A DNA stretch of 64,000 nt from Ranitomeya imitator (Eukaryota): the NCBI RefSeq assembly GCF_032444005.1, contig NC_091288.1, forward strand, positions 218,922,001 to 218,986,000. Reading direction: 5' to 3'. Positions 20,701 to 48,839 of this stretch are shown piece by piece (position 1 is the stretch's first letter; each line of letters opens with the position of its first letter). Both the position numbers and the translations under genes were made by a program. The notes beneath the pieces are model-generated. The model did not search any database. It saw only the letters and a program-made list of their open reading frames with translations, and had not been told where the DNA came from.

Positions 20701-23700
20701 CGTAATATAGGGGTCTGCTGAGGACAGAGTGCTGCATGGAGAATAGAGGGGTCTGGAGGTCATATAGGGGTCTGCTGAGGACAGAGTGCTGCATGGAGAA
20801 TAGAGGGGTCTGGAGGTCATATAGGGGTCTGCTGAGGACAGAGTGCTGCATGGAGAATAGAGGGTTCTGGAGGTCATATAGGGGTCTGCTGAGGACAGAG
20901 TGGTGCATTGAGAATAGAGGGGTCTGGACGTAATATAGGGGTCTGCTGAGGACAGAGTGGTGCATGGAGAATAGAGGGGTCTGGAGGTCATATAGGGGTC
21001 TGCCGAGGACAGAGTGGTGCATGGAGAATAGAGGGGTCTGGAGGTCATATAGGGGTCTGCCGAGGACAGAGTGGTGCATGGAGAATAGAGGGGTCTGGAG
21101 GTCATATAGGGGTCTGCCGAGGACAGAGTGGTGCATGGAGAATAGAGGGTTCTGGACGTCATATAGGGGTCTGCCGAGGACAGAGTGCTGCATGGAGAAT
21201 AGAGGGGTCTGGAGGTCATATAGGGGTCTGCTGAGGACAGAGTGGTGCATTGAGAATAGAGGGGTCTGGAGGTCATATAGGGGTCTGCTGAGGACAGAGT
21301 GGTGCATGGAGAATAGAGGGGTCTGGAGGTCATATAGGGGTCTGCTGAGGACAGAGTGCTGCATGGAGAATAGAGGGTTCTGGAGGTCATATAGGGGTCT
21401 GCTGAGGACAGAGTGGTGCATGGAGAATAGAGGGGTCTGGAGGTCATATAGAGGTCTGCTGAGGACAGAGTGGTGCATGGAGAATAGAGGGGTCTGGAGG
21501 TCATATAGGGGTCTGCTGAGGACAGAGTGGTGCATGGAGAATAGAGGGGTCTGGAGGTCATATAGGGGTCTGCTGAGGACAGAGTGGCGCATGGAGAAAA
21601 GAGGGGTCAGGAGGTCATATAGAGGTCTGCTGAGGACAGAGTGCTGCATGGAGAATAGAGGGTTCTGGAGGTCATATAGGGGTCTGCTGAGGACAGAGTG
21701 GTGCATTGAGAATAGAGGGGTCTGGACGTAATATAGGGGTCTGCTGAGGACAGAGTGGTGCATGGAGAATAGAGGGGTCTGGAGGTCATATAGGGGTCTG
21801 CTGAGGACAGAGTGGTGCATGGAGAATAGAGGGGTCTGGAGGTCATATAGGGGTCTGCTGAGGACAGAGTGGTGCATGGAGAATAGAGGGGTCTGGAGGT
21901 CATATAGGGGTCTGCCGAGGACAGAGTGGTGCATGGAGAATAGAGGGGTCTGGAGGTCATATAGGGGTCTGCCGAGGACAGAGTGGTGCATGGAGAATAG
22001 AGGGTTCTGGACGTCATATAGGGGTCTGCTGAGGACAGAGTGCTGCATGGAGAATAGAGGGGTCTGGAGGTCATATAGGGGTCTGCTGAGGACAGAGTGG
22101 TGCATGGAGAATAGAGGGGTCTGGAGGTCATATAGGGGTCTGCCGAGGACAGAGTGGTGCATGGAGAATAGAGGGGTCTGGAGGTCATATAGGGGTCTGC
22201 CGAGGACAGAGTGGTGCATGGAGAATAGAGGGTTCTGGACGTCATATAGGGGTCTGCCGAGGACAGAGTGCTGCATGGAGAATAGAAGGGTCTGGACTTC
22301 ATATAGGGGTCTGCTGAGGACAGAGTGGTGCATGGAGAATAGAGGGTTCTGGACGTCATATAGGGGTCTGCCGAGGACAGAGTGGTGCATGGAGAATAGA
22401 GGGGTCTGGAGGTCATATAGGGGTCTGCTGAGGACAGAGTGGTGCATGGAGAATAGAGGGGTCTGGAGGTCATATAGGGGTCTGCTGAGGACAGAGTGGT
22501 GCATGGAGAATAGAGGGGTCTGGAGGTCATATAGGGGTCTGCTGAGGACAGAGTGGTGCATTGAGAATAGAGGGGTCTGGAGGTCATATACGGGTCTGCT
22601 GAGGACAGAGTGCTGCATGGAGAATAGAGGGGTCTGGAGGTCATATAGGGGTCTGCTGAGGACAGAGTGCTGCATGGAGAATAGAGGGTTCTGGAGGTCA
22701 TATAGGGGTCTGCTGAGGACAGAGTGGTGCATGGAGAATAGAGGGGTCTGGAGGTCATATAGGGGTCTGCTGAGGACAGAGTGCTGCATGGAGAATAGAG
22801 GGGTCTGGAGGTCATATAGGGGTCTGCTGAGGACAGAGTGCTGCATGGAGAATAGAGGGTTCTGGAGGTCATATAGGGGTCTGCTGAGGACAGAGTGGTG
22901 CATGGAGAATAGAGGGGTCTGGAGGTCATATAGGGGTCTGCCGAGGACAGAGTGGTGCATGGAGAATAGAGGGGTCTGGAGGTCATATAGGGGTCTGCTG
23001 AGGACAGAGTGCTGCATGGAGAATAGAGGGGTCTGGACGTCATATACGGGTCTGCTGAGGACAGAGTGCTGCATGGAGAATAGAGGGGTCTGGAGGTCAT
23101 ATAGGGGTCTGCCGAGGACAGAGTGGTGCATGTAGAATAGAGGGGTCTGGAGGTCATATAGGGGTCTGCTGAGGACAGAGTGGTGCATGGAGAATAGAGG
23201 GGTCTGGAGGTCATATAGGGGTCTGCTGAGGACAGAGTGGTGCATGGAGAATAGAGGGGTCAGGAGGTCATATAGGGGTCTGCTGAGGACAGAGTGGTGC
23301 ATGGAGAATAGAGGGGTCTGGACGTCATATAGGGGTCTGCTGAGGACAGAGTGGTGCATGTAGAATAGAGGGGTCTGGAGGTCATATAGAGGTCTGCTGA
23401 GGACAGAGTGGTGCATGGAGAATAGAGGGGTCTGGAGGTCATATAGGGGTCTGCCGAGGACAGAGTGGTGCATGGAGAATAGAGGGGTCTGGAGGTCATA
23501 TAGGGGTCTGCTGAGGACAGAGTGGTGCATGGAGAATAGAGGAGTCTGGAGGTCATATAGGGGTCTGCTGAGGACAGAGTGGTGCATGGAGAATACAGGG
23601 GTCTGGAGGTCATATAGGGGTCTGCTGAGGACAGAGTGCTGCATGGAGAATAGAGGAGTCTGGAGGTCATATAGGGGTCTGCTGAGGACAGAGTGGTGCA

Positions 23701-26700
23701 TGGAGAATAGAGGGGTCTGGAGGTCATATAGGGGTCTGCTGAGGACAGAGTGGTGCATGGAGAATAGAGGGGTCTGGAGGTCATATAGGGGTCTGCCGAG
23801 GACAGAGTGCTACATGGAGAATAGAGGGGTCTGGAGGTCATATAGGGGTCTGCTGAGGACAGAGTGGTGCATGAAGAATACAGGGGTCTGGAGGTCATAT
23901 AGGGGTCTGCTGAGGACAGAGTGCTGCATGGAGAATAGAGGGGTCTGGACGTAATATAGGGGTCTGCTGAGGACAGAGTGGTGCATGGAGAATAGAGGGG
24001 TCTGGACGTCATATAGGGGTCTGCCGAGGACAGAGTGGTGCATGGAGAATACAGGGGTCTGGACGTCATATAGGGGTCTGCCGAGGACAGAGTGGTGCAT
24101 TGAGAATAGAGGGGTCTGGACGTCATATAGGGGTCTGCTGAGGACAGAGTGGTGCATGAAGAATACAGGGGTCTGGAGGTCATATAGGGGTCTGCCGAGG
24201 ACAGAGTGGTGCATGGAGAATAGAGGGGTCTGGAGGTCATATAGGGGTATGAAGAGGATAGTGGTAGGGGATTTAGGGATCTACAGAGGATAGAGGGGTC
24301 CAGACAACACACATGGGTCCCTCTCCTGACGGTACGCCCAGTTTTCCCCTTTCCCTCACCCCTACTTATATCTAACCCTAATGCTGATGTCGCGCCCTAC
24401 CACCACCCACCCTCCCCAACATCGGCTCCAGCTGCCACCATTACCCTCAGGAACTCCGTCTGCTCCTGTCCCTCCACGTCTTTCAGGACGCCTTCCATCT
24501 GACCGAGCTGCTCCACATAATGGGCCAAACTTTTCCGTTCACCCAGCAGGGCTCCGGAGGCGTTTATCTCCGCTTTGTCAGCTTCTCGAAATAGTGAGTT
24601 CTGCATGATGTCCAGATAGGAGCGCATGGAGTTCAGCTGATCCCGCACACTGGACTTAAAGCGGGAAACTGTGTCCTGTAATGTGAAATATACACTGCTC
24701 AAAAAAATAAAGGGAACACTAAAATTCCACATCCTAGATATCACTGAATGAAATATTCCAGCTGTAAATCTTTATTCATTACATAGTGAAATGTGTTTAG
24801 AAAAATAAAACATAAAAATGATCAACGTAAATCACAACTAATATCCCACGGAGGTCTGGAGTTGGAATGATGCTCAAAATCAAAGTGGAAAATGAAGTTA
24901 CAGGTTGATCTAACTTCATTGGAAATGCCTCAAGACGAGGAAATGATGCTCAGTGGTGTGTGTGGCCTCCACGTGCCTGTATGACCTCCCTACAACGCCT
25001 GGGCATGCTCCTGATGAGGCAGCTGATGGTCTCCTGAGGGATCTCCTCCCAGACCTGGACTAAAGCATCCACCAACTCCTGGACAGTCTGTGGTGCAACG
25101 TGACGTTGGTGGATGGTGCGAGACATGAGGTCCCAGATGTGTTCAGTCGGATTTAGGTCTGGGGAACGGGCGGGCCAGTCCATAGCTTCAATGCTTTCAT
25201 CTTGCAGGAACTGCTGACACACTCCAGCCACGTGAGGTCTGGCATTGTCCTGCATTAGGAGGAACCCAGGGCCAACCGCACCAGCATATCGTCTCACAAG
25301 GGGTCTGAGGATCTCATCTCGGTACCTAATGGCAGTCAGGCTACCTCTGGCGAGCACATGGAGGGCTGTGCGGCCCTCCAAAGAAATGCCACCCCACACC
25401 ATTACTGACCCACTGCCAAACCGGGCATGCTGAAGGATGTGGCAGGCAGCAGATTGCTCTCCACGGCGTCTCCAGACTCTGTCACATGTGCTCAGTGTGA
25501 ACCTGCTTTCATCTGTGAAGAGCACAGGGCGCCAGTGGCGAATTTGCCAATCCTGGTGTTCTGTGGCAAATGCCAAATATCCTGCACGGTGTTGGGCTGT
25601 GAGCACAACCCCCATCTGTGGGCGTCGGGCACTCAGACCATCCTCATGGAGTCAGTTTCTAACCGTTTGTGCAGACACATGCACATTTGTGGCCTGCTGA
25701 AGGTCATTTTGCAGGGCTCTGGCAGTGCTCCTCCTGTTCCTCCTTGCACGAAGGCTGAGGTAGCGGTCCTGCTGCTGGGATGTTGCCCTCCTGCGGCCCC
25801 CTCCACGTCTCCTGGTGTACTGGCCTGTCTCCTGGTACTGCCTCCAGCCTCTGGACACTACGCTGACAGACACAGTAAACCTTCTTGCCACAGCTCGCAT
25901 TGATGTGCCATCCTGAATGAGCTGCACTACCTGAGCCACTTGCGTCGGTTGTAGAGTCCGTCTCATGCTACCACGAGTGTGAAAGCACAACCAACATTCA
26001 AAAGTGACCAAAACACCAGCCAGAAAGCATTGGTACTGAGATGTGGTCTGTGGTCCCCACCTGTAGAACCACTCCTTTATTGAGGGGTCTAGATAATTGC
26101 CAATAATTTCCATCAGTTGTCTATTCCATTTGCACAACAGCATGTGACATTGATTGTCAATCAGTGTTGCTTCCTAAGTGGACAGTCTGATTTCACAGAA
26201 GTTTGATTTACTTGGAGTTAGATTCTGTTGGTTAAGTGTTCCCTTTATTTTTTGAGCGGTGTATATCAAACCCATAGAGAAAAGGGGGCTGCGGATGGGG
26301 GAGGGGTAACATGAACGGGACAGTGGTATAATCATCAGGAGATGCTGGATGTATATGTACCACATATAGAAGATCTGAGGACAGGTGTATGGTGCAGGTA
26401 ATGACGGGGGCAGCGACCACCAGCACTGACCTTCACTTCAGACACCTGTCTGTCCAGCAGAGCCACTGTCTTCTCCTTCCGTAATCGTGCTTCCTGCAGG
26501 AGAACCTGCTGCTGGGGAAGTTGTCTCTAAAAAGAAATATAATACGTCAAAACCTCATACCATCCTGTATTATACTCCAGAGCTGCACTCACTATTCTGC
26601 AGGTGCAGTCACTGTGTACATACATTACATTACTGATCCTGAGTTACCATCCTGTATTATACTCCAGAGCTGCACTCACTATTCTGCTGGTGCAGTCACT

Positions 26701-29700
26701 GTGTACATACATTACATTACTGATCCTGAGTTACCATCCTGTATTATACTCCAGAGCTGCGCTCACTATTCTGCTGGTGCAGTCACTGTGTACATACATT
26801 ACATTACTGATCCTGAGTTACATCCTGTATTATACCCCAGAGCTGCACTCACTATTCTGCTGGTGCAGTCACTGTGCACATACATTACATTACTGATCCT
26901 GAGTTACATCCTGTATTATACCCCAGAGCTGCACTCACTATTCTGCTGGTGCAGTCGCTGTGTACATACATTACATTACTGATCCTGAGTTACATCCTGT
27001 ATTATGCCCCAGAGCTGCACTCACTATTCTGCTGGTGCAGTCACTCACTGTGTACATACATTACATTACTGATCCTGAGTTACATTCTGTATTATACTCC
27101 AGAGCTGCACTCACTATTCTGCTGGGGCAGTCACTGTGTACATACATTACATTACTGATCCTGAGTTACATCCTGTATTATACTCCAGAGCTGCACTCAC
27201 TATTCTGCTGGTGCAGTCACTGTGTACATACATTATATTACTGATCCTGAGTTACCTCCTGTATTATACCCCAGAGCTGCACTCACTATTCTGCTGGTGC
27301 AGTCACTGTGTACATACATTACACTACTGATCCTGAGTTACATCCTGTATTATACTCCAGAGCTGCGCTCACTATTCTGCTGGTGCAGTCACTGTGCACA
27401 TACATTACATTACTGATCCTGAGTTACATCCTGTATTATACCCCAGAGCTGCACTCACTATTCTGCTGGTGCAGTCACTGTGTACGTACATTATATTACT
27501 GCTCCTGCATGATACTCCAGAGCTGCACTCACTATTCTGCTGGTGCAGTCACTGTGCACATACATTACATTACTGATCCTGAGTTACATCCTGTATTATA
27601 CCCCAGAGCTGCACTCACTATTCTGCTGGTGCAGTCACTGTGTACGTACATTACATTACTGCTCCTGCATGATACTCCAGAGCTGCACTCACTATTCTGC
27701 TGGTGCAGTCACTGTGCACATACATTACATTACTGATCCTGAGTTACATCCTGTATTATACTCCAGAGCTGCCCTCACTATTCTGCTGGTGCAGTCACTG
27801 TGTACACACATTACATTACTGATCCTGAGTTGCATCCTGTATTATACTCCAGAGCTGCACTCACTATTCTTCTGGTGCAGTCACTGTGTACACACATTAC
27901 ATTACTGATCCTGAGTTACATCCTATATTATACCCCAGAGCTGCACTCACTATTCTGCTGGTGCAGTCACTGTGTGCGTACATTATATTACTGCTCCTGC
28001 ATGATACTCCAGAGCTGCACTCACTATTCTGCTGGTGCAGTCACTGTGCACATACATTACATTACTGATCCTGAGTTACATCCTGTATTATACTCCAGAA
28101 CTGCGCTCACTATTCTGCTGGTGCAGTCGCTGTGTACATACATTACATTACTGATCCTGAGTTACATCCTGTATTATACTCCAGAGCTGCACTCACTATT
28201 CTGCTGGTGCAGCCACTGTATACACACATTACATTACTGATCCTGAGTTACATCCTGTATTATACCCCAGAGCTGCACTCACTATTCTGCTGGTGCAGTC
28301 ACTGTATACACACATTACATTACTGATCCTGAGTTACCTCCTGTATTATACCCCAGAGCTGCACTCACTATTCTGCTGGTGCAGTCACTGTGTACATACA
28401 TCACATTACTGATCCTGAGTTACATCCTGTATTATACCCCAGAGCTGCACTCACTATTCTGCTGGTGCAGTCACTGTGTACATACATTACATTACTGATC
28501 CTGAGTTACATCCTGTATTATACCCCAGAGCTGCACTCACTATTCTGCTGGTGCAGTCACTGTGTACATACATTACATTACTGATCCTGAGCTACATCCT
28601 GTATTATACTCCAGAGCTGCGCTCACTATTCTGCTGGTGCAGTCACTGTGTACATGCATTACATTACTGATCCTGAGCTACATCCTGTATTATACTCCAG
28701 AGCTGCACTCACTATTCTGCTGGTTCAGTCACTGTGTACATACATTACATTACTGATCCTGAGCTACATCCTGTATTATACCCCAGAGCTGCACTCACTA
28801 TTCTGGTGGTGCAGTCACTGTGTACATACATTACATTACTGATCCTGAGTTACCTCCTGTATTATACCCCAGAGCTGCACTCACTATTCTGCTGGTGCAG
28901 TCACTGTGTACATACATCACATTACTGATCCTGAGTTACATCCTGTATTATACCCCAGAGCTGCACTCACTATTCTGCTGGTGCAGTCACTGTGTACATA
29001 CATTACATTACTGATCCTGAGTTACATCCTGTATTATACCCCAGAGCTGCACTCACTATTCTGCTGGTGCAGTCACTGTGCACATACATTACATTACTGA
29101 TCCTGAGTTACATCCTGTATTATACTCCAGAACTGCGCTCACTATTCTGCTGGTGCAGTCGCTGTGTACATACATTACATTACTGATCCTGAGTTACATC
29201 CTGTATTATACTCCAGAGCTGCACTCACTATTCTGCTGGTGCAGCCACTGTATACACACATTACATTACTGATCCTGAGTTACATCCTGTATTATACCCC
29301 AGAGCTGCACTCACTATTCTGCTGGTGCAGTCACTGTATACACACATTACATTACTGATCCTGAGTTACCTCCTGTATTATACCCCAGAGCTGCACTCAC
29401 TATTCTGCTGGTGCAGTCACTGTGTACATACATCACATTACTGATCCTGAGTTACATCCTGTATTATACCCCAGAGCTGCACTCACTATTCTGCTGGTGC
29501 AGTCACTGTGTACATACATTACATTACTGATCCTGAGTTACATCCTGTATTATACCCCAGAGCTGCACTCACTATTCTGCTGGTGCAGTCACTGTGTACA
29601 TACATTACATTACTGATCCTGAGCTACATCCTGTATTATACTCCAGAGCTGCGCTCACTATTCTGCTGGTGCAGTCACTGTGTACATGCATTACATTACT

Positions 29701-31992
29701 GATCCTGAGCTACATCCTGTATTATACTCCAGAGCTGCACTCACTATTCTGCTGGTTCAGTCACTGTGTACATACATTACATTACTGATCCTGAGCTACA
29801 TCCTGTATTATACCCCAGAGCTGCACTCACTATTCTGCTGGTGCAGTCACTGTGTACATACATTACATTACTGATCCTGAGTTACCTCCTGTATTATACC
29901 CCAGAGCTGCACTCACTATTCTGCTGGTGCAGTCACTGTGTACATACATCACATTACTGATCCTGAGTTACATCCTGTATTATACCCCAGAGCTGCACTC
30001 ACTATTCTGCTGGTGCAGTCACTGTGTACATACATTACATTACTGATCCTGAGCTACATCCTGTATTATACTCCAGAGCTGCGCTCACTATTCTGCTGGT
30101 GCAGTCACTGTGTACATGCATTACATTACTGATCCTGAGCTACATCCTGTATTATACTCCAGAGCTGCACTCACTATTCTGCTGGTTCAGTCACTGTGTA
30201 CATACATTACATTACTGATCCTGAGCTACATCCTGTATTATACCCCAGAGCTGCGCTCACTATTCTGCTGGTGCAGTCACTGTGTACATGCATTACATTA
30301 CTGATCCTGAGCTACATCCTGTATTATACTCCAGAGCAGCACTCACTATTCTGCTGGTTCAGTCACTGTGTACATGCATTACATTACTGATCCTGAGCTA
30401 CATCCTGTATTATACTCCAGAGCTGCACTCACTATTCTGCTGGTTCAGTCACTGTGTACATACATTACATTACTGATCCTGAGTTACATCCTGTATTATA
30501 CCCCAGAGCTGCACTCACTATTCTGCTGGTGCAGTCGCTGTGTACATACATTACTGATCCTGAGTTACATCCTGTATTATACTCCAGAGCTGCACTCACT
30601 ATTCTGCTGGTGCAATCACTGTGTACATACATTACTGATCCTGAGTTACATCCTGTATTATACTCCAGAGCTGCACTCACTATTCTGCTGGTGCAGTCAC
30701 TGCGTACATACATTACATTACTGATTCTGAGTTACATCCTGTATTATACCCTAGAGCTGCACTCACTATTCTGCTGGTGCAGTCACTGTGTACATACATT
30801 ACATTACTGATCCTGAGTTACATCCTGTATTATACTCCAGAGCTGCACTCACTATTCTGCTGGTGCAATCACTGTGTACATACATTACATTACTGATCCT
30901 GAGTTACCTCCTGTATTATACCCCAGAGCTGCACTCACTATTCTGCTGGGGCAGTCACTGTGTACATACATTACATTACTGATCCTGAGTTACATCCTGT
31001 ATTATACTCCAGAGCTGCACTCACTATTCTGCTGGTGCAGTCACTGTGTACATACATTACTGGTCCTGTATTATACCCCAGAGCTGCACTCACTATTCTG
31101 CTGGTGCAGTCACTGTGTACATACATTACATTACTGATCCCGAGTTACCTCCTGTATTATACCCCAGAGCTGCACTCACTATTCTGCTGGTGCAGTCACT
31201 GTGTACATACATTACATTACTGATCCTGAGTTACATCCTGTATTATACCCCAGAGCTGCGCTCAGTATTCTGCTGGTGCAGTCACTGTGTACATACATTA
31301 CATTACTGATCCTGTATTATACTCCAGAGCTGCACTCACTATTCTGCTGGTGCAGTCACTGTGTACACACATTACATTACTGGTCCTGTATGATACTCCA
31401 GAGCTGCACTCACTATTCTGTTGGTGCAGTCACTGTGTACACACATTACATTACTGGTCCTGTATGATACTCCAGAGCTGCACTCACTATTCTGCTGGTG
31501 CAGTCACTGTGTACACACATTACATTACTGGTCCTGTATGATACTCCAGAGCTGCGCTCACTATTCTGCTGGTGGAGGACCCTGGGGCAGCCTCACCTTC
31601 ATCTTGGCGTGTGCCTCGGCGGCTGTGATGATGTTGTGGCCCTTGTGTTTCCCCAGGGAGGCGCACACCCCACAGATCAGCTCCTTGTCCTGCTCGCAGA
31701 AGACGCTCAGCGGGTCCAGGTGCTCCAGGCAATGCCCCTGCGGAACCTGCTTGAAGCTTTGGACGAGATGTTCCAGCTGACGATTGATGTGAAGGGTCTC
31801 AGGCCGGGATGGAGCTTGACAAGTGGGGCAGAGAGTGGAGCCATTTGAGTCCTGGCCCTTGGGGGCCCCGGTCAAGCAGCTTTGGCAGAACGTGTGTCCA
31901 CATTCTGGTGTGACGGGTGATCGGAAGAGTTCTAGACAGAGCTGACAGGTGAGGTCATTCTGCATGCCCTGCACGAGCTGGGGGGTCGCCAT
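17771..31992 (-). CDS. trim72: Tripartite motif protein 72 (MG53), 476 aa. Coding exons: 31992-31597, 26526-26431, 24675-24445, 18768-18746, 18664-18546, 18336-17771.
   Basis: RING (CQLC...CGHTFC...CPTC), B-box ([30 protein letters not shown]), coiled coil and PRY/SPRY domains. TRIM72-diagnostic strings [27 protein letters not shown] and [14 protein letters not shown] are present. All introns are GT-AG, and the exons (396+96+231+23+119+566 = 1431 nt) form an intact frame. Confidence 0.97.
19030..24250. repeat. About 5.2-kb satellite with a 57-bp unit in trim72 coding intron 3
   Basis: Unit ggggtctggaggtcatataggggtctgctgaggacagagtggtgcatggagaataga, about 90 copies. Confidence 0.97.
24693..26261 (-). 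mobile_element. Full-length Tc1 (DD34E) transposon in trim72 coding intron 2
   Basis: TA TSDs at 24691-24692 and 26262-26263. TIRs CACTGCTCAAAAAAATAAAGGGAACACT. The transposase runs 25966-24950 with motifs FTDESRF, QDNARPH and SPDLNPTE, and has 34 residues between the second D and the E. Confidence 0.95.
24950..25966 (-). pseudogene. Tc1 transposase with a single in-frame nonsense codon
   Basis: ORFs 25652-26143 and 24950-25615 share one frame. The only lesion seen is TGA at 25654-25652 (...VRN*LHEDG...). Confidence 0.88.
26560..31570. repeat. About 5-kb satellite with an 86-bp unit in trim72 coding intron 1
   Basis: Unit catcctgtattatactccagagctgcactcactattctgctggtgcagtcactgtgtacatacattacattactgatcctgagtta. 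The ORF track repeats with an 86-bp period. Confidence 0.97.
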
Positions 31993-37873: not shown

Positions 37874-40800
37874 ATGAGGATGAAGACGGTGAGGGACCTC
37901 CTGCTCCAGGCCCTGGAGAACTTGGAAAATAAATCCTTTAAGAAGTTTAAGAACAAGTTAAATGATTGGGATATAGAGGAGGAATATGCCCGGATCCCGA
38001 GAGGGCCGCTGGAGGTGGCGGACCCCGAGGACGTGGCGGACCTGATCAGACGGTATTACATGGATTCCTATAGCGTGAAGGTAACCGTGGCCGTGCTAGA
38101 AGCCATAAACGAGAACCGTGAGGCGGAGGAGCTGGAGAAAGCCTGGAAGACGGGTAAGAAGCGGAGAATCTGGGAAGAAGATGTTACTATGAGGGACAAT
38201 AGTACAAGGGGGTCCCGGAGGGGGCAGCGGAGCAGACACGGGATGTAGCTCTTAGGCTATGTGCACACGTTCAGGATTTCTCGCAGAAAATTCCTGAGAA
38301 AAACCGGACATTTTCTGCAAGAAAACCTCATGCGTTTTTGCCGCGGTTTTTTCCAGACACTTCCCAGTGCATTTTGTAGTGGGAAATTCGCAAAAAAAAC
38401 ACAAAATTAATGAACATGCTGCGTTTTTTTACCGCGATGCGGTTTTTTTTTTCGCAGAAAAAACGCATCATGTGCACAAAACATGCGAAATTCATTCTAA
38501 ATGATGGGATGCTTATTGTATGCGTTTTTTTTTTGCGGTTTTATAGCATTTTTATCGGGAAAAACCGCGAAAAAACCGCAACGTGTGCACACAGCCTTAG
38601 GCCGGGTTCACGTTAGCGTTATTGTGCGCAGCGTGTGATCCGCATACATCATGCGTACTTATCTTTAAGGCTATGTGCACACGTTGCAGATTATTTGCGG
38701 TTTTCTAGCGTTTTTGCGCTATGAAAACGCTATAAAACCGCAAATAATCTGCATACATTAAGCATCCTATCATTTTTAATGAAATCCGCAATTTCTGTGC
38801 ACATGATGTGCGTTTTTCCGCATGAAAAACGCATTGCGGAAAAATAATGAACCTGCTCATTAATTTTGCGTTTTTTTTTTCGCGGTTTTCCCACTGTCTA
38901 ATGCATTGGGAAATGTCTGGAAAAAAACGCATCAAAACCGCGCAAAAAACGCGCAAAAAAAACGCATGCGGATTTCATGCGGAAATCTGCCAGAAATGTC
39001 CGGAGTTTCACAGGAATTTTCTGCATGAATTCCTGAACGTTTGCACATAGCCTAACATGGTGTACGCAGGGACACGCGTATGCATGCGTCATTTCACGGT
39101 GTGCGGCGGATTCCAGCGAACGCAACATGTTGCATTTTTTGAGGCGTCAAATATTGCGCATGCGGATGAGCGCGTCAAAAAACCGCATTATTGTCTATGG
39201 GAACGCATTGGTACGCAAAGACATGCATACCTTAGACTGCGCATGTCCAGGAAATGATGTCACCACCTCCACCGTGCACGTAAAAAACGCAAACACATTT
39301 TAACGCATGCACACGCAGCGTTGTTTTTTTTTTTTTTTTTGTGTCATGCGTAAGATGATGCGGAGGCGCATGCAGATGACATGCTGCGCACAGAAACGCT
39401 AATGTGAACCTAACCTTAGTAAAGCCATCGTGGTACAGACGATGGAGATGTCACCAGAAGGAAGAAAACGTCTCCAGCAGCGACCCTGAACCTCCGTGTC
39501 CAAGGAACAAAATCAGATAAAGCCTCTGTTCACACGCTGCGCTTTTGCTGCTGCATTTTTTTCACAGGCAAAACCTGCTCTCCCGGCAGTAAAGAAGCTG
39601 CTTACAAAATGCCGATTTTGCAGATTTTTTTGCTGCATTTTTGTTGTCTCTCGTACATGATGATAAAGTTTAGTGCCCCCCTAAAAAAAAAAAAAAAAAA
39701 GTTTAACTTCCTTAGGTTTTTGCGCCAAAGCCTGATCCCTGTGGTTTTTGCTGCGTTTTTGCACTAACCCATTGTTTCCTATGGGTGAAAAAAAACGCGG
39801 AAAGAAGTGACCGCTGCAGTTTTCCGAATCAGTCAGGAAATTAAACCCAATGTGGGGTCATGGGATTTCTGAAATCTCAGGCTTTGCTGGTGCTGTAAAA
39901 AGCAGCTGAAAATTTGCATTAAAAAAAAAGGATGCAAAAACGCCCAGTGTGAACATAGCCTTATCTATACAACAAATCAATATTCTGACTATGACCCGAT
40001 CTGTGTGCCAAATCCGGGACCTGGCTACTTATCAGGAGAGCCGGGGCTCGGTGTTATCAGTGTATACACTACATCACATATACAGTGATGGTTAAAGGGG
40101 ATGTCCCCGCTGAAAAAACTCCTGCAGGCTCAGATACATGTAGAAAACATAATCTGAGCTTTACTTACCCTCCCCTGGTCCAGCACAGGACACTACTGGG
40201 CTGCAGCCAATCACTCAGCACAGCACCGTAGCTCAGTAATTGGCTGCAGCGCTACTGACGTGATTTCACCGCTGCAGCCAAACAAAAGAATGCAACTTGT
40301 TAATTCTCACCTGACTTCTGCGGAGAGTCCAGTCATCTGCATTCAGATTTTTTACATAAACTTTTTTTTTTACATATTTTTTTTACCCGTAGAGCGGACG
40401 TGCGTCATCAGTACATGAAGCGGGCTGTGTTACACAGATGGCACCTGAGAGCGACAGCTGCAGAGCTGGGTCTGATCGCAACCAAGCGACAGCTGCAGAG
40501 CTGGGTCTGATCGCAACCAAGCGACAGCTGCAGAGCTGGATCTGATCGCAACCAAGCGACAGCTGCAGAGCTGGGTCTGATCGCAACCAAGCGACAGCTG
40601 CAGAGCTGGGTCTGATCCCAACCAAGCAACAGCTGCAGAGCTGGGTCTGATCCCAACCAAGCGACAGCTGCAGAGCTGGGTCTGATCGCAACCAAGCGAC
40701 AGCTGCAGAGCTGGGTCTGATCGCAACCAAGCGACAGCTGCAGAGCTGGGTCTGATCCCAACCAAGCGACAGCTGCAGAGCTGGGTCTGATCGCAACCAA

Positions 40801-43800
40801 GCGACAGCTGCAGAGCTGGGTCTGATCCCAACCAAGCGACAGCTGCAGAGCTGGGTCTGATCCCAACCAAGCGACAGCTGCAGAGCTGGGTCTGATCGCA
40901 ACCAAGCGACAGCTGCAGAGCTGGGTCTGATCCCAACCAAGCGACAGCTGCAGAGCTGGGTCTGATCCCAACCAAGCGACAGCTGCAGAGCTGGGTCTGA
41001 TCGCAACCAAGCGACAGCTGCAGAGCTGGGTCTGATCGCAACCAAGCGACAGCTGCAGAGCTGGGTCTGATCCCAACCAAGCGACAGCTGCAGAGCTGGG
41101 TCTGATCGCAACCAAGCGACAGCTGCAGAGCTGGGTCTGATCCCAACCAAGTGACAGCTGCAGAGCTGGGTCTGATCCCAACCAAGCGACAGCTGCAGAG
41201 CTGGGTCTGATCGCAACCAAGCGACAGCTGCAGAGCTGGGTCTGATCCCAACCAAGCGACAGCTGCAGAGCTGGGTTTGATCCCAACCAAGCGACAGCTG
41301 CAGAGCTGGGTCTGATCGCAACCAAGCGACAGCTGCAGATAAAGGCCTAAAAAATAATACGGACAACCATAAAGAATAAAAAGTGTTCATTTTTCGGTTG
41401 GTCAGGCTTCGTGGGAACTTGTTTTTTTTTGCCACTGATCTGACTTTTTTATTGATACCGTTCTCATCTAGATACAATGTTTCTTATTGCACTTTTTGCG
41501 GAGTTGCGTTTTTTTCCTTAGCGGTCAGGTTAATTAATTTGATGAGGAGATATCAAACGTTTAATTTTTTTTGGTTTATTTTAAATGAGGGGGAAGAATA
41601 CTTTTTTTTTTTTTTTAACTTTTTTTTGTTCACTTTATTTGTGAAATCTCAGCCTGTGATCGTCAGATGGATTGTACCATATACCGCAATACTATAGTAA
41701 GAATAATCGTGGAGTCTTATGAACACCAGTCATAGGTTGGTCTTCATAGAAGCACGGGGGTCTTCATAGAAGCACGGGGGTCTTCCTCTGGGGCCACCTG
41801 GAGGTCCTATATTTACAGTCGGAGCATGCGGATTCATTCTGGGCATAAACATGGGCAATGCCGGTTTATACTACGGATAATGCGCACTTTCTCTGTCCGG
41901 ACAGTAGAGGGCAGGCGCGCGTCGTACTGACTTCATTGTGATTGCCTCCTCTGTTACCCTATCATCATGGAAATGATCAGATCAGGAGCCGCTGGGGTCT
42001 TTCTGCACTGTTGTGTGGACACTGTGGTCAGCAGTTATCAAAAATGGCGTAACCTGCTCCGTTATTACTTACTAAAGAGAATCCGTCAGCAGGTTTTTGC
42101 TATGTAATCAGAGAGCAGCATGATAGAGGGGCAGCATTTATATTGTGAGGGCATCAATCCGCAATTGGGCACTGAAAGAAAAGGTGAAAGGGTGTTTGCT
42201 GGAACAATCGCCACCATGGACAGGACCACATCTCCTGTACTCCATGGGCAAGCAGGGGCAACAAACCGCAAAATCTTGGATGCAAACGCAATGATGATTG
42301 ATGGTCTTCTATCTGCAGAAACGAGTTCAGAAACTGCTGGCTGTTCTCCTGATCTCTAAATCGCTCAGTTTTCCTCTCTTTTGACTGTTATAGAATGTTT
42401 CTCCTACTTCAGTGCTATAAAAGCTTTCGGAAACTTTACAGTTTTTGATCCTTTTGAATTCAGATGGAAGGAAATTTATTTTTTACAAGTGTTCAAGAGA
42501 GTTCATGGGTAATGTAGAACGAGAGTCACGTGACAGGTTCTGGAGGAAAAAGACAAAAGAACCGCAGAGGTCGAAAGGGACCGAAAAAGTAGGCCGTCAA
42601 AACAAGAAGAAGGCACGCTTATAGAAAATATCACACTTGTGCAAATTGGGGGAAAAAGTGGAAAAACCCTTATTATAGGTGGAACATTGACTCACAGGGC
42701 AGTGTCGCTGCACATAAGGTTTCTTCCTTCTGGTAGAGAGCTAGTTTGCATACTTTTCTTCCAGAAATTATTATTTCTTCAAGAAAAACCTAGTATACCC
42801 CGATATATGCAGTCCTATGTAAGGCACAAAGTATTCCCAATAGAGTAGAGATCACAGTACTGGCGTATGAGCACGGCTTCAGCATCTTCCTCCATAGTCG
42901 TGAGCGATGACCAGTCCTGGACTCATCTCAGGGATTCTGTTTTTTTGTGTTTTTCAGTGAATTGTTGTACAACCAAGAGAGAAGATCAAGGAGCAACATC
43001 GAGAGGTGAGCAGTCCAAGAGAGAAGACCAAGGAGCAACATCGAGAGTTGAGCAGTCCAAGAGAGAAGACCAAGGAGCAACATCGAGAGGTGAGCAGCCG
43101 GAGAGAGAAGACCAAGGATCAACATCGAGAGGTGAGCAGTCCAAGAGAGAAGAGCAAGGAGCAACATCAAGAGGTGAGCAGTCCAAGAGAGAAGACCAAG
43201 GAGCAACATCGAGAGGTGACCAATCCAAGAGAGAAGATTAAGGAGCAACATCAAGAGGTGAGCAGTCCAAGAGAGAAGACGAAGGAGCAACATCGAGAGG
43301 TGAGCGGTGGCCTGGAGCCTCCTCACTATAGGTCCGAGGCCTTGATATAATCCAATAGAAAGAATGTTCTGCTTGAAATCCCGAATGTGTGTATATAGCC
43401 TTAACCCCGGTCCTGTGTCCTCCCTACACGCATACACGTTCATTGTAAGTCCCTGATAGCGCCATTATGAATTGGGGGGGAGTGGTATATGACTTTAACA
43501 GGGTCTTATGATGAAATAGGGGATGGGAGAGGATGCTATCAGGTACTTAGAAAAATTTAGACCTGGGCCCCCACCTGCATGTTGGCCAGATATATAAGCC
43601 CTCGAAGCGTTCTAGATCCTATAAAGACATATGTGTTCACCCCCATATAATTATGCTCCTAATCCTAGTCCCCTTCTTAGTATAATGTCCGACATCCTAG
43701 GCCCCTTCTTAGTATAATGTCCTCCACCTGGGCCCTTTTATGGAATATTGTCCCCCAACCTGGCCCCTTCTTAGTATATTATAATGTCCTCCACCTGGGC

Positions 43801-44420
43801 CCCTTCATGGAATATTGTCCCCCATCCTGGGCCCCTTCATACCCTAAGGTATTGAATACAATTATTTAAAAAAAAGAAAAATATAGATAGAATTTCTCTA
43901 AAACGAACATGAGATGCTCTACTCATCACAATGTAACATTACAGCCCTCCATGTCTGGACTCACCGCTTCTCTTCATTTTGATCTTTTATTTCAGCACCG
44001 ATTCAGGAAACATCTCGGGGAGCGACATGCTGAGGTGAGAGGAGGAGGAGGAGAGGCTCCTTGTAAATCGTATCAGTCTCATCGAATAGTGAAGTCACTC
44101 ATATAGGTGACTGTCGGGGACGGAGGACGATCATTAATCTCATAGCTTCTGTTCTCATTACAGATCAGGAGCATTTTGTGGACAGACATCGCGCTCAGCT
44201 GATACAGCGGGTGCATCTTCTGGGCCAAGTCCTGGACGACCTCCTTCAGAACAAGCTGCTGACATATGAAGGCTACAACACCGTGCTCAGCATGAAACCC
44301 TCCCAGCAGCAGATGCGAGAGCTCTACCGATACATGTCATCCTGGGGGAATAAAGACAAGGATAAGTTCCTGCAATCTCTGAAGACACACTACGCTCCGC
44401 TCATCAAGACTCTGGAGTAG
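37874..44420 (+). CDS. pycard: PYCARD/ASC-like gene: PYD exon 37874-38153, candidate linker exons 42464-42508, 42958-43005 and 43996-44034 (stop-containing), CARD exon 44164-44420
   Basis: PYD: MKTVRDLLLQALENL...FKKFKNKL...RIPRGPL...DLI...Y, ending in phase 1 at a GTAAG donor (38154). CARD: EHFVDRHRAQLIQRV...MRELY...LE*, after a phase-1 acceptor at 44162-44163. The gene is divergent from trim72, as human PYCARD and TRIM72 are. Linker exon usage is inferred. Confidence 0.85.
38255..39415. mobile_element. Cluster of PIF/Harbinger-type MITEs: 38255-38596, then 38600-39415 with 38669-39052 nested inside it
   Basis: TIRs GGCTATGTGCACACG and GGCCGGGTTCAC with 3-bp TTA/TAA target duplications. Confidence 0.8.
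39521..39960. mobile_element. PIF/Harbinger-type MITE
   Basis: agcctctgttcacac...gtgtgaacatagcc, flanked by TAA and TTA. Confidence 0.65.
40455..41338. repeat. 35-bp minisatellite in pycard intron 1
   Basis: Unit gcgacagctgcagagctgggtctgatcgcaaccaa. Confidence 0.95.
42972..43305 (+). repeat. 42-bp tandem repeat (8 units) spanning the exon 3' end and splice donor of a pycard linker exon
   Basis: The unit encodes GEQSKREDQGATSR. GAG|GTGAG donors recur every 42 bp. Confidence 0.9.
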
Positions 44421-44530
44421 ACTGAACTGCCTCACATCATGAGTGGAGCGTCAGCTCCTGGGGTCAGTCCTGTAGCTGCAGCTATGGAGGAGGGGATGTG
44501 TCCTTCATCATTCTTTTATACGTAAAAACA

Positions 44531-44536
44531 AATAAA
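44531..44536 (+). terminator. Candidate polyadenylation signal after the first CARD exon
   Basis: AATAAA 110 nt after the TAG. Confidence 0.55.
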
Positions 44537-44639
44537 AAATCTGGTACCGAATTTATAAATGGTTTTCTATCATTTTTTGAATATGAAAACGCTAACATGA
44601 AATAGTCCCGGGCTACAGAAAAATAGTCCGAAGCTACAG

Positions 44640-45670
44640 TCGCTGTGACCAGTGGGGTACCGCAGGGGTCAGTATTGGGACCTGTTCTCTTCAACATATT
44701 CATTAATGATCTGGTAGAAGGTTTACACAGTAAAATATCGATATTTGCAGATGATACAAAACTATGTAAAGCAGTTAATACAAGAGAAGATCGTATTCTG
44801 CTACAGATGGATCTGGATAAGTTGGAAACTTGGGCTGAAAGGTGGCAGATGAGGTTTAACAATGATAAATGTAAGGTTATACACATGGGAAGAGGGAATC
44901 AATATCACCATTACACACTGAACGGGAAACCACTGGGTAAATCTGACAGGGAGAAGGACTTGGGGATCCTAGTTAATTATAAACTTACCTGGAGCAGCCA
45001 GTGCCAGGCAGCAGCTGCCAAGGCAAACAGGATCATGGGGTGCATTAAAAGAGGTCTGGATACACATGATGAGAGCATTATACTGCCTCTGTACAAATCC
45101 CTAGTTAGACCGCACATGGAGTACTGTGTCCAGTTTTGGGCACCGGTGCTCAGGAAGGATATAATGGAACTAGAGAGAGTACAAAGGAGGGCAACAAAAT
45201 TAATAAAGGGGATGGGAGAACTACAATACCCAGATAGATTAGCGAAATTAGGATTATTTAGTCTAGAAAAAAGACGACTGAGGGGCGATCTAATAACCAT
45301 GTATAAGTATATAAGGGGACAATACAAATATCTCGCTGAGGATCTGTTTATACCAAGGAAGGTGACGGGCACAAGGGGGCATTCTTTGCGTCTGGAGGAG
45401 AGAAGGTTTTTCCACCAACATAGAAGAGGATTCTTTACTGTTAGGGCAGTGAGAATCTGGAATTGCTTGCCTGAGGAGGTGGTGATGGCGAACTCAGTCG
45501 AGGGGTTCAAGAGAGGCCTGGATGTCTTCCTGGAGCAGAACAATATTGTATCATACAATTATTAGGTTCTGTAGAAGGACGTAGATCTGGGTATTTATTA
45601 TGATGGAATATAGGCTGAACTGGATGGACAAATGTCTTTTTTCGGCCTTACTAACTATGTTACTATGTTA
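44640..45670 (+). mobile_element. 5'-truncated CR1 LINE: RT C-terminus (ORF 44645-45565) plus 3' UTR
   Basis: Motifs SGVPQGSVLGPVLFNIFINDL, FADDTKL, LGLFSLEKRRLRGDLI and RGHSLRL. The element ends in a short tandem tail (actatgttactatgtta). Confidence 0.93.
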
Positions 45671-48030: not shown

Positions 48031-48635
48031 TGACACGCATTCTTTGTGTCAGTCCACTCATGACCAATAGACACGGCCAGAAGTGTCTTTCCTGGGCCAA
48101 GGAGAAGAAGAACTGGACTGTTGTCAGTGGTCCAAGGTGTTGTTTTTCATTTGGAAATCAAGGTCCCAGAGTCTGGAGGAAGAGTGGAGAGGCCACAATC
48201 CAAGCTGCTGGAGGTCTAGTGTGAAGTCTCCACAATCGGTGATGGTTTGGGGAGCCATGTCATCTGCTGGTGTAGGTCCACTGTGTTTTATCAAGACGAA
48301 AGTCAGCGCAGCCGTCTACCAGGACATTGTAGAGCACTTCATGCTTCCCTCTGCCGACAAGCTTTTTGGAGATGGAAATGTCATTCTCCAGCAGGACTTG
48401 GCCCCTGTCCACACTGCCAAAAGTACCAATACCTGGTGTAAAAACAACAGTATCACTGGGCTTGATTGGCAGCAAACTCGCCTGACCTTAACCCCATAGA
48501 GAATCTATGGAGTATTGTCAAGAGGAAGATGAGAGACTCCAGACCCAACAATGCAGACGAGCTGAAGGCTGCTATCAAAGCAACCTGGGCTTCCATAACC
48601 CCTCAGCAGCGCCACAGGCTGATCGCCTCCATGCG
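48030..48635 (+). mobile_element. Internal fragment of a Tc1 transposase, frameshifted, no TIRs
   Basis: Motifs PQSVMVWGAMS, LQQDLAPVHTAK and NSPDLNPIENLWSIVKRKM. Confidence 0.88.
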
Positions 48636-48839
48636 GCTAGAAATGAAAAGCAGACAATACAGCTCTTTTGCATATAAAGAAAACATGGATTTCTCTGGAA
48701 AAAAGATAATAGATGGCAGTTATGAAGGTATCATTTTCTTCAGCTTCCTATGACCTGCGTGCACATATAGATGGCTAGTCCTACTGACAAATCCCCTTTA
48801 TATGTGGCTGTCAATCTCTGACAGTGGCACTTGCTGTAT

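What the first reader, a model, noticed from the sequence alone, without database searches (positions are those of the whole stretch)
42958..43305. A tandem array of splice donors that could tune the ASC linker in 14-aa steps
Seen in sequence: a 48-nt phase-1 exon (42958-43005, VNCCTTKREDQGATSR) is followed by 42-bp copies of its own 3' end plus donor. Intact GT donors lie at 43006, 43090, 43132, 43174 and 43216, all in frame and before the TAA at about 43239-43241. The donor at 43048 is mutated (GT>TT), and those at 43258 and 43300 lie after the stop. Each downstream donor adds GEQSKREDQGATSR units, and the last two give CARD-less products. Established: linker length differs between human ASC and ASC-b and affects speck assembly. 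Inference: a minisatellite may act as a splice-based and copy-number-based dial on inflammasome adaptor geometry.
Basis: partly seen in the sequence, partly recalled or inferred. Interest (0 to 1): 0.7.

Follow-up and report, generated by a model that had tools for sequence, protein, structure and literature searches.

The report
Frog ASC linker exon lengthened by repeat
In the mimic poison frog, a 42-base repeat has copied the end of a small exon of an inflammation-adaptor (ASC) gene together with its splice signal eight times, but assembled RNA shows the cell reads through all the copies and splices only at the last one, so the repeat is a seven-fold longer coding exon and not a set of alternative splice choices.

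Summary
The gene is a PYD/linker/CARD (ASC) gene of Ranitomeya imitator. The splice-dial reading is not borne out. Assembled RNA contigs from four runs of four studies join the PYD exon to 42958, read through the 43006 donor, and tile the whole array at exon depth. They splice only at the last donor (43300) to a second small linker exon (43996-44034), then to the CARD exon. The array is therefore one 342-nt, 114-codon exon. The reference TAA (43239-41) reads CAA in all four runs and as Q in a second assembly's gene model. One run has a second junction that is either an allele of the last copy or an internal donor. The in-frame TGA of the next exon is present in the RNA, so the main message encodes PYD plus a disordered tail without the CARD. 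Annotated orthologues in five other frog genera, and in the congener R. variabilis, have one unit, so the expansion is young. Splice-donor minisatellites are a known kind (F7, IFI6, CBS), and this scan noted at least 14 in this genome. Those use the first donor; this one uses the last.

The parts
37874..38153 (+). PYD exon (coding part from the ATG); donor GTAAGA at 38154, phase 1
   Evidence: Pfam PF02758 E 3.1e-20. Sequence read. Contigs of X1, X5 and X10 carry its last 30 nt directly before 42958.
42958..43299 (+). Linker exon as found in RNA: 342 nt, 114 codons, phase 1 at both ends
   Evidence: Contigs tile 42957-43297 at exon depth. Junction 43299|43996 is present in 4 of 4 runs.
42958..43005 (+). 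Ancestral 48-nt part of the exon (VNCCTTKREDQGATSR), the only part present in orthologues
   Evidence: Orthologues of six other species have one 16-aa unit here.
42973..43305 (+). 42-bp minisatellite, 7.9 copies; the unit is about 33 nt of exon end plus 9 nt of intron start
   Evidence: TRF score 568, 91% matches, 0 indels. Copies laid in register.
43006..43011 (+). First GTGAGC donor, the ancestral one; read through in RNA
   Evidence: The contig that holds the PYD-exon junction continues to 43023 in X1, X5 and X10.
43048..43053 (+). Dead donor copy (TTGAGC; Gly to Val)
   Evidence: A contig covering 43018-43078 is identical to the window in X1 and X5.
43216..43221 (+). Weakened donor copy GTGACC; the donor chosen by RefSeq model XP_069591770.1
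43238..43241 (+). TT (assembly) versus CC (RNA): the assembly reads gat-TAA, the RNA reads gac-CAA
   Evidence: T>C at 43238 and 43239 at 100% of depth in all 4 runs. P0015 reads DQ here.
43258..43263 (+). Penultimate GTGAGC donor; read through in RNA; the donor used by ENA model CAJ0922047.1
   Evidence: Contigs X5-23 and X6-30 run 43251-43299 and then into exon B. P0015.
43300..43305 (+). Last GTGAGC donor, the one actually used
   Evidence: GT..AG joint 43299|43996 in X1, X5, X6 and X10, at depths 54, 47, 21 and 18.
43996..44034 (+). Second linker exon (39 nt, phase 1) with in-frame TGA at 44031-33
   Evidence: Sequence read. Both of its junctions are present in 4 of 4 runs, with no letter differences. 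R. variabilis has Gly at the TGA position.
44164..44551 (+). CARD exon, stop TAG at 44418-20, 3' UTR, AATAAA at 44531, poly(A) added after 44551
   Evidence: Pfam PF00619 E 5.6e-16. The X5 contig ends in a run of A after 44551. AATAAA located.

Best explanation
A young tandem duplication, apparently specific to R. imitator, copied the last ~33 nt of the ASC linker exon together with the first ~9 nt of the intron, donor included. The period is 42 bp, which is 14 codons.

The spliceosome uses the copy nearest the intron, so the whole array has become coding exon. The exon grew from 48 to 342 nt and now specifies a 114-residue, highly charged stretch that is predicted to be disordered. The six upstream GT copies are silent inside the exon.

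Inferred cause of last-donor use:
- Each unit is about 80% exon-derived and purine-rich, so it carries the exon's enhancer-like GAAGA and AAGGAG motifs past every internal donor.
- Equally strong 5' splice sites about 42 nt or more apart are resolved in favour of the intron-proximal one.

The next exon (43996-44034) is included and carries an in-frame TGA. The main mRNA therefore encodes PYD plus a ~126-residue tail (219 aa) and not a PYD-linker-CARD adaptor. A second, conventional ASC paralogue is expressed from elsewhere in the genome.
For: Shown:
- Junction PYD exon|42958, with read-through of 43006, in 3 runs.
- Contigs covering every distinguishable copy boundary.
- Array contig depths (X1: 73, 75, 50, 80; X10: 38, 38, 32, 29) comparable to the CARD exon (46; 39), against 0-8 in the intron behind.
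- Junctions 43299|43996 and 44034|44164 in 4 of 4 runs from 4 studies.
- Contig X5-23 links copy 7/8, exon B, the CARD exon and the poly(A) tail in one piece (all).
- Six donor 9-mers are identical, so site strength does not pick the last one.
- Purine content is 74% in the array against 44-49% in the flanking intron. GAAGA occurs 8 times and AAGGAG 7 times in the array, and neither occurs in equal lengths of intron on either side.
- Annotated orthologues of R. variabilis, Dendrobates, Phyllobates, Anomaloglossus and Bufo have a single unit.
- The array region has pLDDT below 50 and no secondary structure, while PYD and CARD fold well.

From the literature:
- With two strong 5' sites, the intron-proximal one is used almost exclusively. 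Its use rises beyond ~30 nt of separation and reaches ~100% at 45 nt or more (PMC3413131).
Against: - Contigs drop rare variants and cannot be counted, so minor use of internal donors is not excluded.
- Run X10 has a second junction contig (depth 14.5 against 18). Its 28 array letters fit the copies ending at 43089 or 43215 as well as a G>C allele at 43281 of the last copy.
- In X5 the inner array contigs are shallower (8-20) than the 3' contig (47).
- The human F7 minisatellite and the other arrays this scan noted in the same genome use the first donor (PMC1557585). Proximity alone therefore cannot be the rule, and the enhancer argument is untested.
- The runs' RNA nature is inferred from their splice junctions and poly(A) tail. 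It is not on record.
- No DNA of other species could be fetched, so 'single unit' rests on annotated proteins.
Confidence: 0.78

Rival explanations
1. Several of the in-frame donors are used side by side or in a regulated way, giving a ladder of ASC linkers in 14-aa steps. This would resemble the 12-nt minisatellite of human 6-16/IFI6, where the first three donors are used.
For: - Six identical in-frame donors.
- A second junction contig in X10 at roughly 45% that fits the donors at 43090 or 43216.
- Two public gene models pick internal donors: 43216 in XP_069591770.1 and 43258 in CAJ0922047.1.
- A precedent in IFI6 and CBS (PMC1557585).
Against: - Three of four runs show one junction, at the full depth of the downstream exon.
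- The X10 depths, 18 + 14.5 against 38.5, fit two alleles. X10 also differs from the window at other sites.
- Both gene models look ORF-maximising. The RefSeq model needs a CAT|GCTGAG donor at 44029 (3 of 9 consensus matches), which all four runs contradict with 44034|44164.
- The TGA in exon B removes the CARD from the frame whichever donor is used.
Confidence: 0.15
2. Decay of a redundant duplicate. The repeat expansion, the TGA in exon B and the TAA allele are neutral damage in an ASC copy made dispensable by the paralogue P0028. The long tail has no function. This agrees with the splicing picture above and differs only on meaning.
For: - Two independent nonsense changes. TGA is present in all RNA runs and in the assembly. 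TAA is in the assembly only.
- About 8 replacement to 4 silent differences among copies, which is close to neutral.
- 7 of 8 GT dinucleotides retained, which is about what 9% divergence predicts.
- The window is 46% minisatellite.
- An intact paralogue is expressed (loose-end contig; P0028).
Against: - The gene is transcribed, correctly spliced and polyadenylated at depths similar to or above the paralogue's contig in four studies.
- The PYD is intact and 100% identical between two assemblies.
- The TGA lies 1 nt before the last junction, so it should escape nonsense-mediated decay and leave a stable PYD-only message.
- PYD-only regulators are a known functional class in primates.
Confidence: 0.35
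3. Artefact. The array contigs come from unspliced pre-mRNA or contaminating DNA, and mature mRNA uses the 43006 donor. Alternatively, the copy number is an assembly error.
For: - The runs are only guessed to be RNA.
- Low-depth contigs do cover parts of the intron in X1 and X10.
Against: - The same contig holds the spliced PYD junction and 18 nt beyond 43006.
- The same contig holds copy 7/8 and the spliced exon B, the CARD exon and the poly(A) tail.
- Array depth is about 10 times intron depth.
- No 43005 junction appears in any run.
- Distinctive copy boundaries (the TT copy, the CCGGAG copy, the GACC copy) are reproduced without change in independent runs, and the first six copies appear in two annotated assemblies.
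Confidence: 0.04

Closest known systems
Splice-donor minisatellites whose first monomer spans an exon-intron boundary: human F7 IVS7 (37 bp), 6-16/IFI6 (12 nt), CBS intron 13 (31 bp), LMNB2, PDGF (PMC1557585)
   Same: A tandem array that starts inside the exon, so the donor is reiterated many times with identical sequence. The period here is in frame, as in IFI6. IFI6 is also an innate-immunity gene.
   Different: In every case listed in that paper, only the first donor, or the first plus the next two, is used and the rest are silent intron. Here the last is used and the array is exon. The F7 unit is 4 bp of exon plus 33 bp of intron. This unit is about 33 nt of exon plus 9 nt of intron.
Other splice-donor minisatellites noted by this scan in the same genome (EMC1, NECAP1, STT3A, FLVCR1, GALNS, ZNRF1, MFN2, POLQ)
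   Same: Same genome, same kind of origin, same repeat-prone background.
   Different: According to those unchecked notes, the RNA that could be seen (NECAP1, STT3A, GALNS, POLQ) uses only the first donor. I did not re-examine those loci.
Intron-proximal preference between duplicated strong 5' splice sites (Eperon laboratory; PMC3413131)
   Same: Identical strong sites; the one nearest the 3' splice site wins almost completely once they are about 45 nt apart. Here the spacing is 42 nt and the last site wins.
   Different: That work used two sites in engineered globin or adenovirus substrates. This is a natural eight-copy array, and no protein binding was tested.
Human ASC, ASCb and the engineered ASC3X (PMC9640978)
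   Same: The PYD and CARD exons are separated by small phase-1 linker exons, and linker length is the variable. ASC has a 23-aa linker, ASCb 4 aa and ASC3X 69 aa, and ASC3X polymerises less well.
   Different: Human variation comes from skipping a cassette exon, not from repeated donors. The frog linker would be about 127 aa, beyond anything tested. In the main frog mRNA a TGA stops translation before the CARD.
In-frame coding minisatellites (coding VNTRs); Xenopus tropicalis PYD-CARD protein with a long repetitive linker (P0038, 358 aa)
   Same: Period a multiple of three, no frameshifts, low-complexity disordered product. P0038 shows that a long repetitive spacer between PYD and CARD arose independently in another frog.
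   Different: Ordinary coding VNTRs lie wholly inside an exon. This one was built from an exon end and includes translated former intron bases (GTGAGCAGT read as Gly-Glu-Gln-Ser). The P0038 repeats are unrelated in sequence.

Membership tests
ASC / PYCARD | N-terminal pyrin domain | tested here: met
   PF02758 E 3.1e-20, covering 76 of 76 profile positions. Folds with pLDDT 80-90.
ASC / PYCARD | C-terminal CARD encoded downstream in the same gene | tested here: met
   PF00619 E 5.6e-16. The CARD exon is joined to the upstream exons in contigs of 4 runs.
ASC / PYCARD | PYD and CARD in one open reading frame of the mRNA | tested here: not met
   Exon B is included in all four runs and keeps TGA at 44031-33, 1 nt before the CARD exon. 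No exon-B-skipping junction was seen, although contigs can miss minor forms.
ASC / PYCARD | Orthology to annotated frog ASC genes | tested here: met
   82% identity over the PYD to Anomaloglossus ASC. Same exon order and linker motifs in seven species.
ASC / PYCARD | Forms specks and recruits caspase-1 | not testable with these tools
   Needs cell assays.
Splice-donor minisatellite (F7 / IFI6 / CBS type) | Tandem array whose first monomer spans the exon-intron boundary | tested here: met
   The array starts at 42973 inside the exon, and the ancestral donor at 43006 lies in unit 1.
Splice-donor minisatellite (F7 / IFI6 / CBS type) | Donor sequence reiterated downstream | tested here: met
   7 of 8 copies keep GT, and 6 share the 9-mer GAG|GTGAGC.
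Splice-donor minisatellite (F7 / IFI6 / CBS type) | The most upstream donor(s) are used; downstream copies are silent intronic pseudo-sites | tested here: not met
   The first donor is read through and the last donor is joined to the next exon in 4 of 4 runs.
Splice-donor minisatellite (F7 / IFI6 / CBS type) | Copy number polymorphic (VNTR) | tested here: inconclusive
   No 42-nt gaps or insertions in contigs of 4 runs, but 31-mer contigs cannot count copies. The ENA model ends after copy 7 and its gene range is 302 nt shorter; no DNA was available.
In-frame coding minisatellite | Period a multiple of 3, no frameshift, present in mature mRNA, open frame | tested here: met
   Period 42, 0% indels. 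Exonic in RNA, and CAA instead of TAA in all 4 runs. The assembly's own allele has the TAA.
   One junction in X1, X5 and X6. A second junction in X10 is equally explained by a SNP at 43281.

The most novel reading that the evidence does not exclude
The make-up of the repeated unit decides the fate of a splice-donor minisatellite. Units made mostly of intron (F7 and, by the scan's notes, most arrays in this frog) stay silent behind the first donor. A unit made mostly of purine-rich exon carries its enhancers along, is defined as exon, and shifts splicing to the last donor. That turns a repeat into new coding sequence in one step.

With at least 14 such arrays in one genome, the old conflict between 5'-to-3' scanning and intron-proximal choice becomes testable by comparison. 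A further possibility is that internal donors rescue carriers of the TAA allele.
Probability: 0.35. Interest if true: 0.6.

Novelty: new variant of a known kind. Interest (0 to 1): 0.42.

Why it matters
**For splicing.** This is a natural array of identical donors 42 nt apart that behaves opposite to the textbook F7 case, and opposite to sister arrays in the same genome. It is therefore a ready-made test of what makes the cell choose the first or the last of equal sites.

**For gene evolution.** It shows a one-step route from exon-boundary duplication to 98 extra codons, with former intron bases translated.

**For inflammasome biology.** The copy has a roughly 7-fold expanded linker and a stop just before the CARD. 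An intact ASC paralogue exists elsewhere, and a CARD-only gene lies next door. Together these suggest that this frog is splitting an ASC duplicate into single-domain pieces, much as primates made POPs and COPs. None of the protein-level consequences has been tested.

Tried and rejected
- **Fetching orthologue DNA.** I tried to fetch the orthologous DNA of R. variabilis and of the second R. imitator assembly, to see whether the array is absent or shorter. Both look-ups returned gene ranges but no DNA because the files are too large. I did not repeat this for other frogs.
- **CARD-exon word search.** A protein word search with the CARD exon alone was meant to catch run-derived ORFs in which an array unit is joined directly to the CARD. 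It found no candidate at all. This says nothing either way.
- **Paralogue in the window.** I looked in the window for the paralogue seen as a loose-end contig. It is absent, so it lies elsewhere; it matches P0028.
- **Retained intron.** I considered that the array coverage was retained intron. I rejected this because the same contigs carry splice junctions, and depth falls about 10-fold after 43300.
- **The two public gene models as evidence for internal donors.** I rejected this because one needs a GC donor that all runs contradict, and both avoid stops.
- **Selection on the donors or on the peptide.** Substitutions among copies (about 8 replacement, 4 silent; 7 of 8 GT kept) do not depart from neutrality.
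- **Turri et al. 1995 (IFI6).** The paper is not held. It is cited only through PMC1557585.
- **Spliced models.** Exons were searched one by one by reference. The alignment and the fold used database proteins.
Full report
**What is in the sequence**

The stretch lies in a three-part gene on the + strand.
- A PYD exon starts at ATG 37874 and ends at 38153, before GTAAGA (Pfam PYRIN, E 3.1e-20).
- A small exon begins at 42958, after a long pyrimidine tract and AG.
- A CARD exon begins at 44164 and stops at TAG 44418-20 (Pfam CARD, E 5.6e-16).
- All introns are phase 1.

Tandem Repeats Finder reports a 42-bp array at 42973-43305, with 7.9 copies, 91% matches and no indels. A 16-nt core of the unit occurs eight times in the window, where 0.11 are expected.

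Laid in register, the unit is about 33 nt of exon end plus GTGAGCAGT, the start of the intron.
- Six copies share the donor 9-mer GAG|GTGAGC: 43006, 43090, 43132, 43174, 43258 and 43300.
- The copy at 43216 is GTGACC.
- The copy at 43048 is TT.
- The frame is open up to TAA at 43239-41.

**Whose gene it is**

- Two database proteins of Ranitomeya imitator match the window's PYD exon and copies 1-6 exactly (P0015 and P0045). Earlier notes of this scan also name the mimic poison frog.
- Those notes point to a second small linker exon at 43996-44034. I read it myself: it is 39 nt, phase 1, has good splice sites, and carries an in-frame TGA at 44031-33.

**What the RNA shows**

The index found 13 runs from four studies that hold part of 42900-44520. 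All are kept as assembled contigs, and their RNA nature is only guessed. I laid one run per study on 42400-44560. Splice junctions and a poly(A) tail show that they are RNA. The results were:

1. In X1, X5 and X10 a contig carries the last 30 nt of the PYD exon directly before 42958. It continues through the 43006 donor to 43023, where the repeat breaks the 31-mer graph.
2. Short contigs tile every distinguishable copy boundary up to 43297. Their depths are like those of the flanking exons: in X1, 73, 75, 50 and 80 against 46 for the CARD exon; in X10, 38, 38, 32 and 29 against 39. The intron behind has 0-8.
3. A GT..AG junction 43299|43996 and a junction 44034|44164 are present in all four runs. 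In X5 and X6 a single contig holds the end of copy 7, copy 8, exon B and the CARD exon. In X5 it also holds the poly(A) tail added after 44551, 15 nt past the AATAAA signal at 44531-36.
4. No junction leaves 43005.
5. Positions 43238-39 read CC instead of TT in all four runs, at full depth. The TAA is CAA in the RNA.
6. Exon B shows no letter differences, so its TGA is in the RNA.

The array is therefore one 342-nt exon of 114 codons, spliced at its last donor. With the CC allele, the main message has a 219-codon frame: PYD, 114 array residues and 12 residues of exon B. It ends 1 nt before the last exon junction. By the usual 50-55-nt rule, which I take from established knowledge and did not test, that position should escape nonsense-mediated decay.

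**The one loose thread**

X10 has a second junction contig into exon B, at depth 14.5 beside 18 for the standard one. Its 28 array letters carry C where the last copy has G at 43281.
- They fit the copies ending at 43047 (a TT site), 43089 and 43215 equally well.
- They also fit a G>C allele of the last copy.
- The two depths add up to about the depth of the CARD exon, and X10 differs from the window at other sites. The other three runs show the standard junction at the full depth of the exon behind it.

A heterozygous animal is the simpler reading, but use of an internal donor is not excluded. Contigs also drop rare forms, so minor isoforms remain possible.

**Public gene models disagree with the RNA and with each other**

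- The ENA model CAJ0922047.1 (P0015, 278 aa) leaves the array after copy 7 and skips exon B.
- The RefSeq model XP_069591770.1 (P0045, 404 aa, 'pyrin-like') leaves the array after copy 6, at the weakened GTGACC site. That is the last GT before the TAA. It shortens exon B through CAT|GCTGAG at 44029, which matches 3 of 9 consensus positions, and then runs on into the neighbouring CARD gene.
- All four runs contradict 44028|44164.

Both models look like solutions that keep a frame open, so they are not evidence for internal donors. P0015 does give independent DNA-level support that copy 7 reads DQ in another animal.

**Age**

Annotated orthologues carry one 16-residue unit followed by the exon-B peptide and the CARD. 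The species are R. variabilis, Dendrobates tinctorius, Phyllobates terribilis, Anomaloglossus baeobatrachus (three copies), Bufo bufo and B. gargarizans. R. variabilis has Gly where R. imitator has the TGA.
- The expansion and the stop therefore both appear to have arisen after the two Ranitomeya species split.
- This rests on annotated proteins. The frog DNA could not be fetched.
- Differences among copies (about 8 replacement, 4 silent; 7 of 8 GT kept) look neutral.
- The window is 46% minisatellite, with 17 arrays. The local mutation process is common. Its landing on an exon end with a period divisible by three is what made it visible in the protein.

**The product**

The unit GEQSKREDQGATSR has three positive and three negative charges in 14 residues. 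In an AlphaFold model of P0015 built on the 14-sequence alignment, PYD and CARD reach pLDDT 80-90. Residues 98-195 stay below 50 with no secondary structure, so the array is predicted to be disordered.

**Why the last donor (inferred)**

- The donors are identical, so strength does not decide.
- Work on duplicated strong 5' sites shows almost exclusive use of the intron-proximal one. The preference rises beyond about 30 nt of separation and is complete at 45 nt or more (PMC3413131). The spacing here is 42 nt.
- The array is 74% purine, against 44-49% in the flanking intron. It holds GAAGA eight times and AAGGAG seven times, and neither occurs in equal lengths of intron on either side. Each internal donor is therefore followed by exon-like, enhancer-like sequence, while only the last donor is followed by true intron.
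- Against a simple proximity rule: the human F7 intron 7 minisatellite uses only the first of five to nine identical donors, and IFI6 and CBS use the first three (PMC1557585). The F7 unit is 4 bp of exon and 33 bp of intron, nearly the reverse of the proportions here. This suggests that the make-up of the unit decides the outcome. That is a hypothesis, not a result.

**Comparison with what is known**

- Splice-donor minisatellites are an established kind (PMC1557585).
- This scan has noted at least 14 in this same genome: EMC1, NECAP1, STT3A, FLVCR1, GALNS, ZNRF1, MFN2, POLQ and others. According to those unchecked notes, only the first donor was seen in the RNA that could be examined.
- This case meets the structural definition but fails the behavioural one. 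It ends up as an in-frame coding minisatellite that includes translated former intron bases.
- On the protein side, human ASC (23-aa linker), ASCb (4 aa) and the engineered ASC3X (69 aa, poorer polymerisation) show that linker length matters (PMC9640978). In this frog, however, the main message does not join PYD to CARD at all.

**Verdict**

- The identification of the gene and the in-frame nature of the repeat are right.
- The splice-dial is not supported, and copy-number variation is untested.
- I rate this a new variant of a known kind, of moderate interest. It matters mainly as a natural counter-example for 5' splice-site choice, and as part of a picture in which this ASC duplicate is being taken apart.

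Exons were searched one by one by reference.

Noticed in passing
window 43238-43241: The assembly reads gat-TAA where all four RNA runs and a second assembly's gene model read gac-CAA (DQ). This is a two-base difference that makes a nonsense allele 97 nt before the last exon junction. It is probably a real allele of the sequenced animal, but no DNA reads were checked.
   Followed up: partly
window 43996-44034: The second linker exon is included in the contigs of all four runs with its in-frame TGA intact, 1 nt before the junction to the CARD exon. The main message is therefore PYD-only by frame.
   Followed up: partly
window 44029 and 43216; P0045: RefSeq model XP_069591770.1 ('pyrin-like', 404 aa) uses a weak GTGACC donor and a CAT|GCTGAG donor, and then continues into the neighbouring CARD gene, giving a PYD-CARD-CARD product. 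The second of these junctions is contradicted by the contigs. PYD-CARD-CARD fusions are also annotated in R. variabilis, Dendrobates, Phyllobates and both Bufo species.
   Followed up: partly
P0012, P0011 (Bufo bufo, B. gargarizans): The toad orthologues read ...GATSR-GEQRPEGSLE... and ...GATSR-VEQRPGGSLE.... These are translations straight through the homologue of this donor (GTGAGCAG read as G-E-Q) into what is intron in poison frogs. In B. gargarizans the Gly is Val, the same GT>TT change as copy 3 here.
   Followed up: no
P0038, P0039 (Xenopus tropicalis): A PYD-CARD protein of 344-358 aa has an unrelated, very long repetitive spacer (KKKTPGSQKKPP-type repeats plus a roughly 55-aa duplication). 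Long repetitive PYD-CARD linkers have therefore arisen more than once in frogs.
   Followed up: no
window 44168-44204 (loose-end contigs in X1, X5): A second ASC paralogue is expressed from outside the window. It matches P0028 (198 aa, single GDQGATSRE linker, no exon B) and looks like the conventional ASC of this frog.
   Followed up: partly
P0018 and P0027 (R. variabilis paralogue, isoforms X1 and X2): The two isoforms differ by 13 aa, an exon-B-like cassette (APIEEAAQGVTSR). Linker length in frog ASC genes may therefore vary by exon skipping, as in human ASC/ASCb.
   Followed up: no
window 1-64000: There are 17 separate minisatellite arrays covering about 29.4 kb, or 46% of the window. They include 5-kb arrays at 9536-14449, 19033-24248 and 26561-31574, and a 35-bp x 25 array in intron 1 of this gene (40450-41339).
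   Followed up: partly
window 44645-45565 and 48083-48753: A reverse-transcriptase fragment (Pfam RVT_1, E 1.3e-14) begins about 90 nt after the poly(A) site. Open reading frames that look like transposase remnants lie further on, separated by a 2.4-kb 21-bp array.
   Followed up: no
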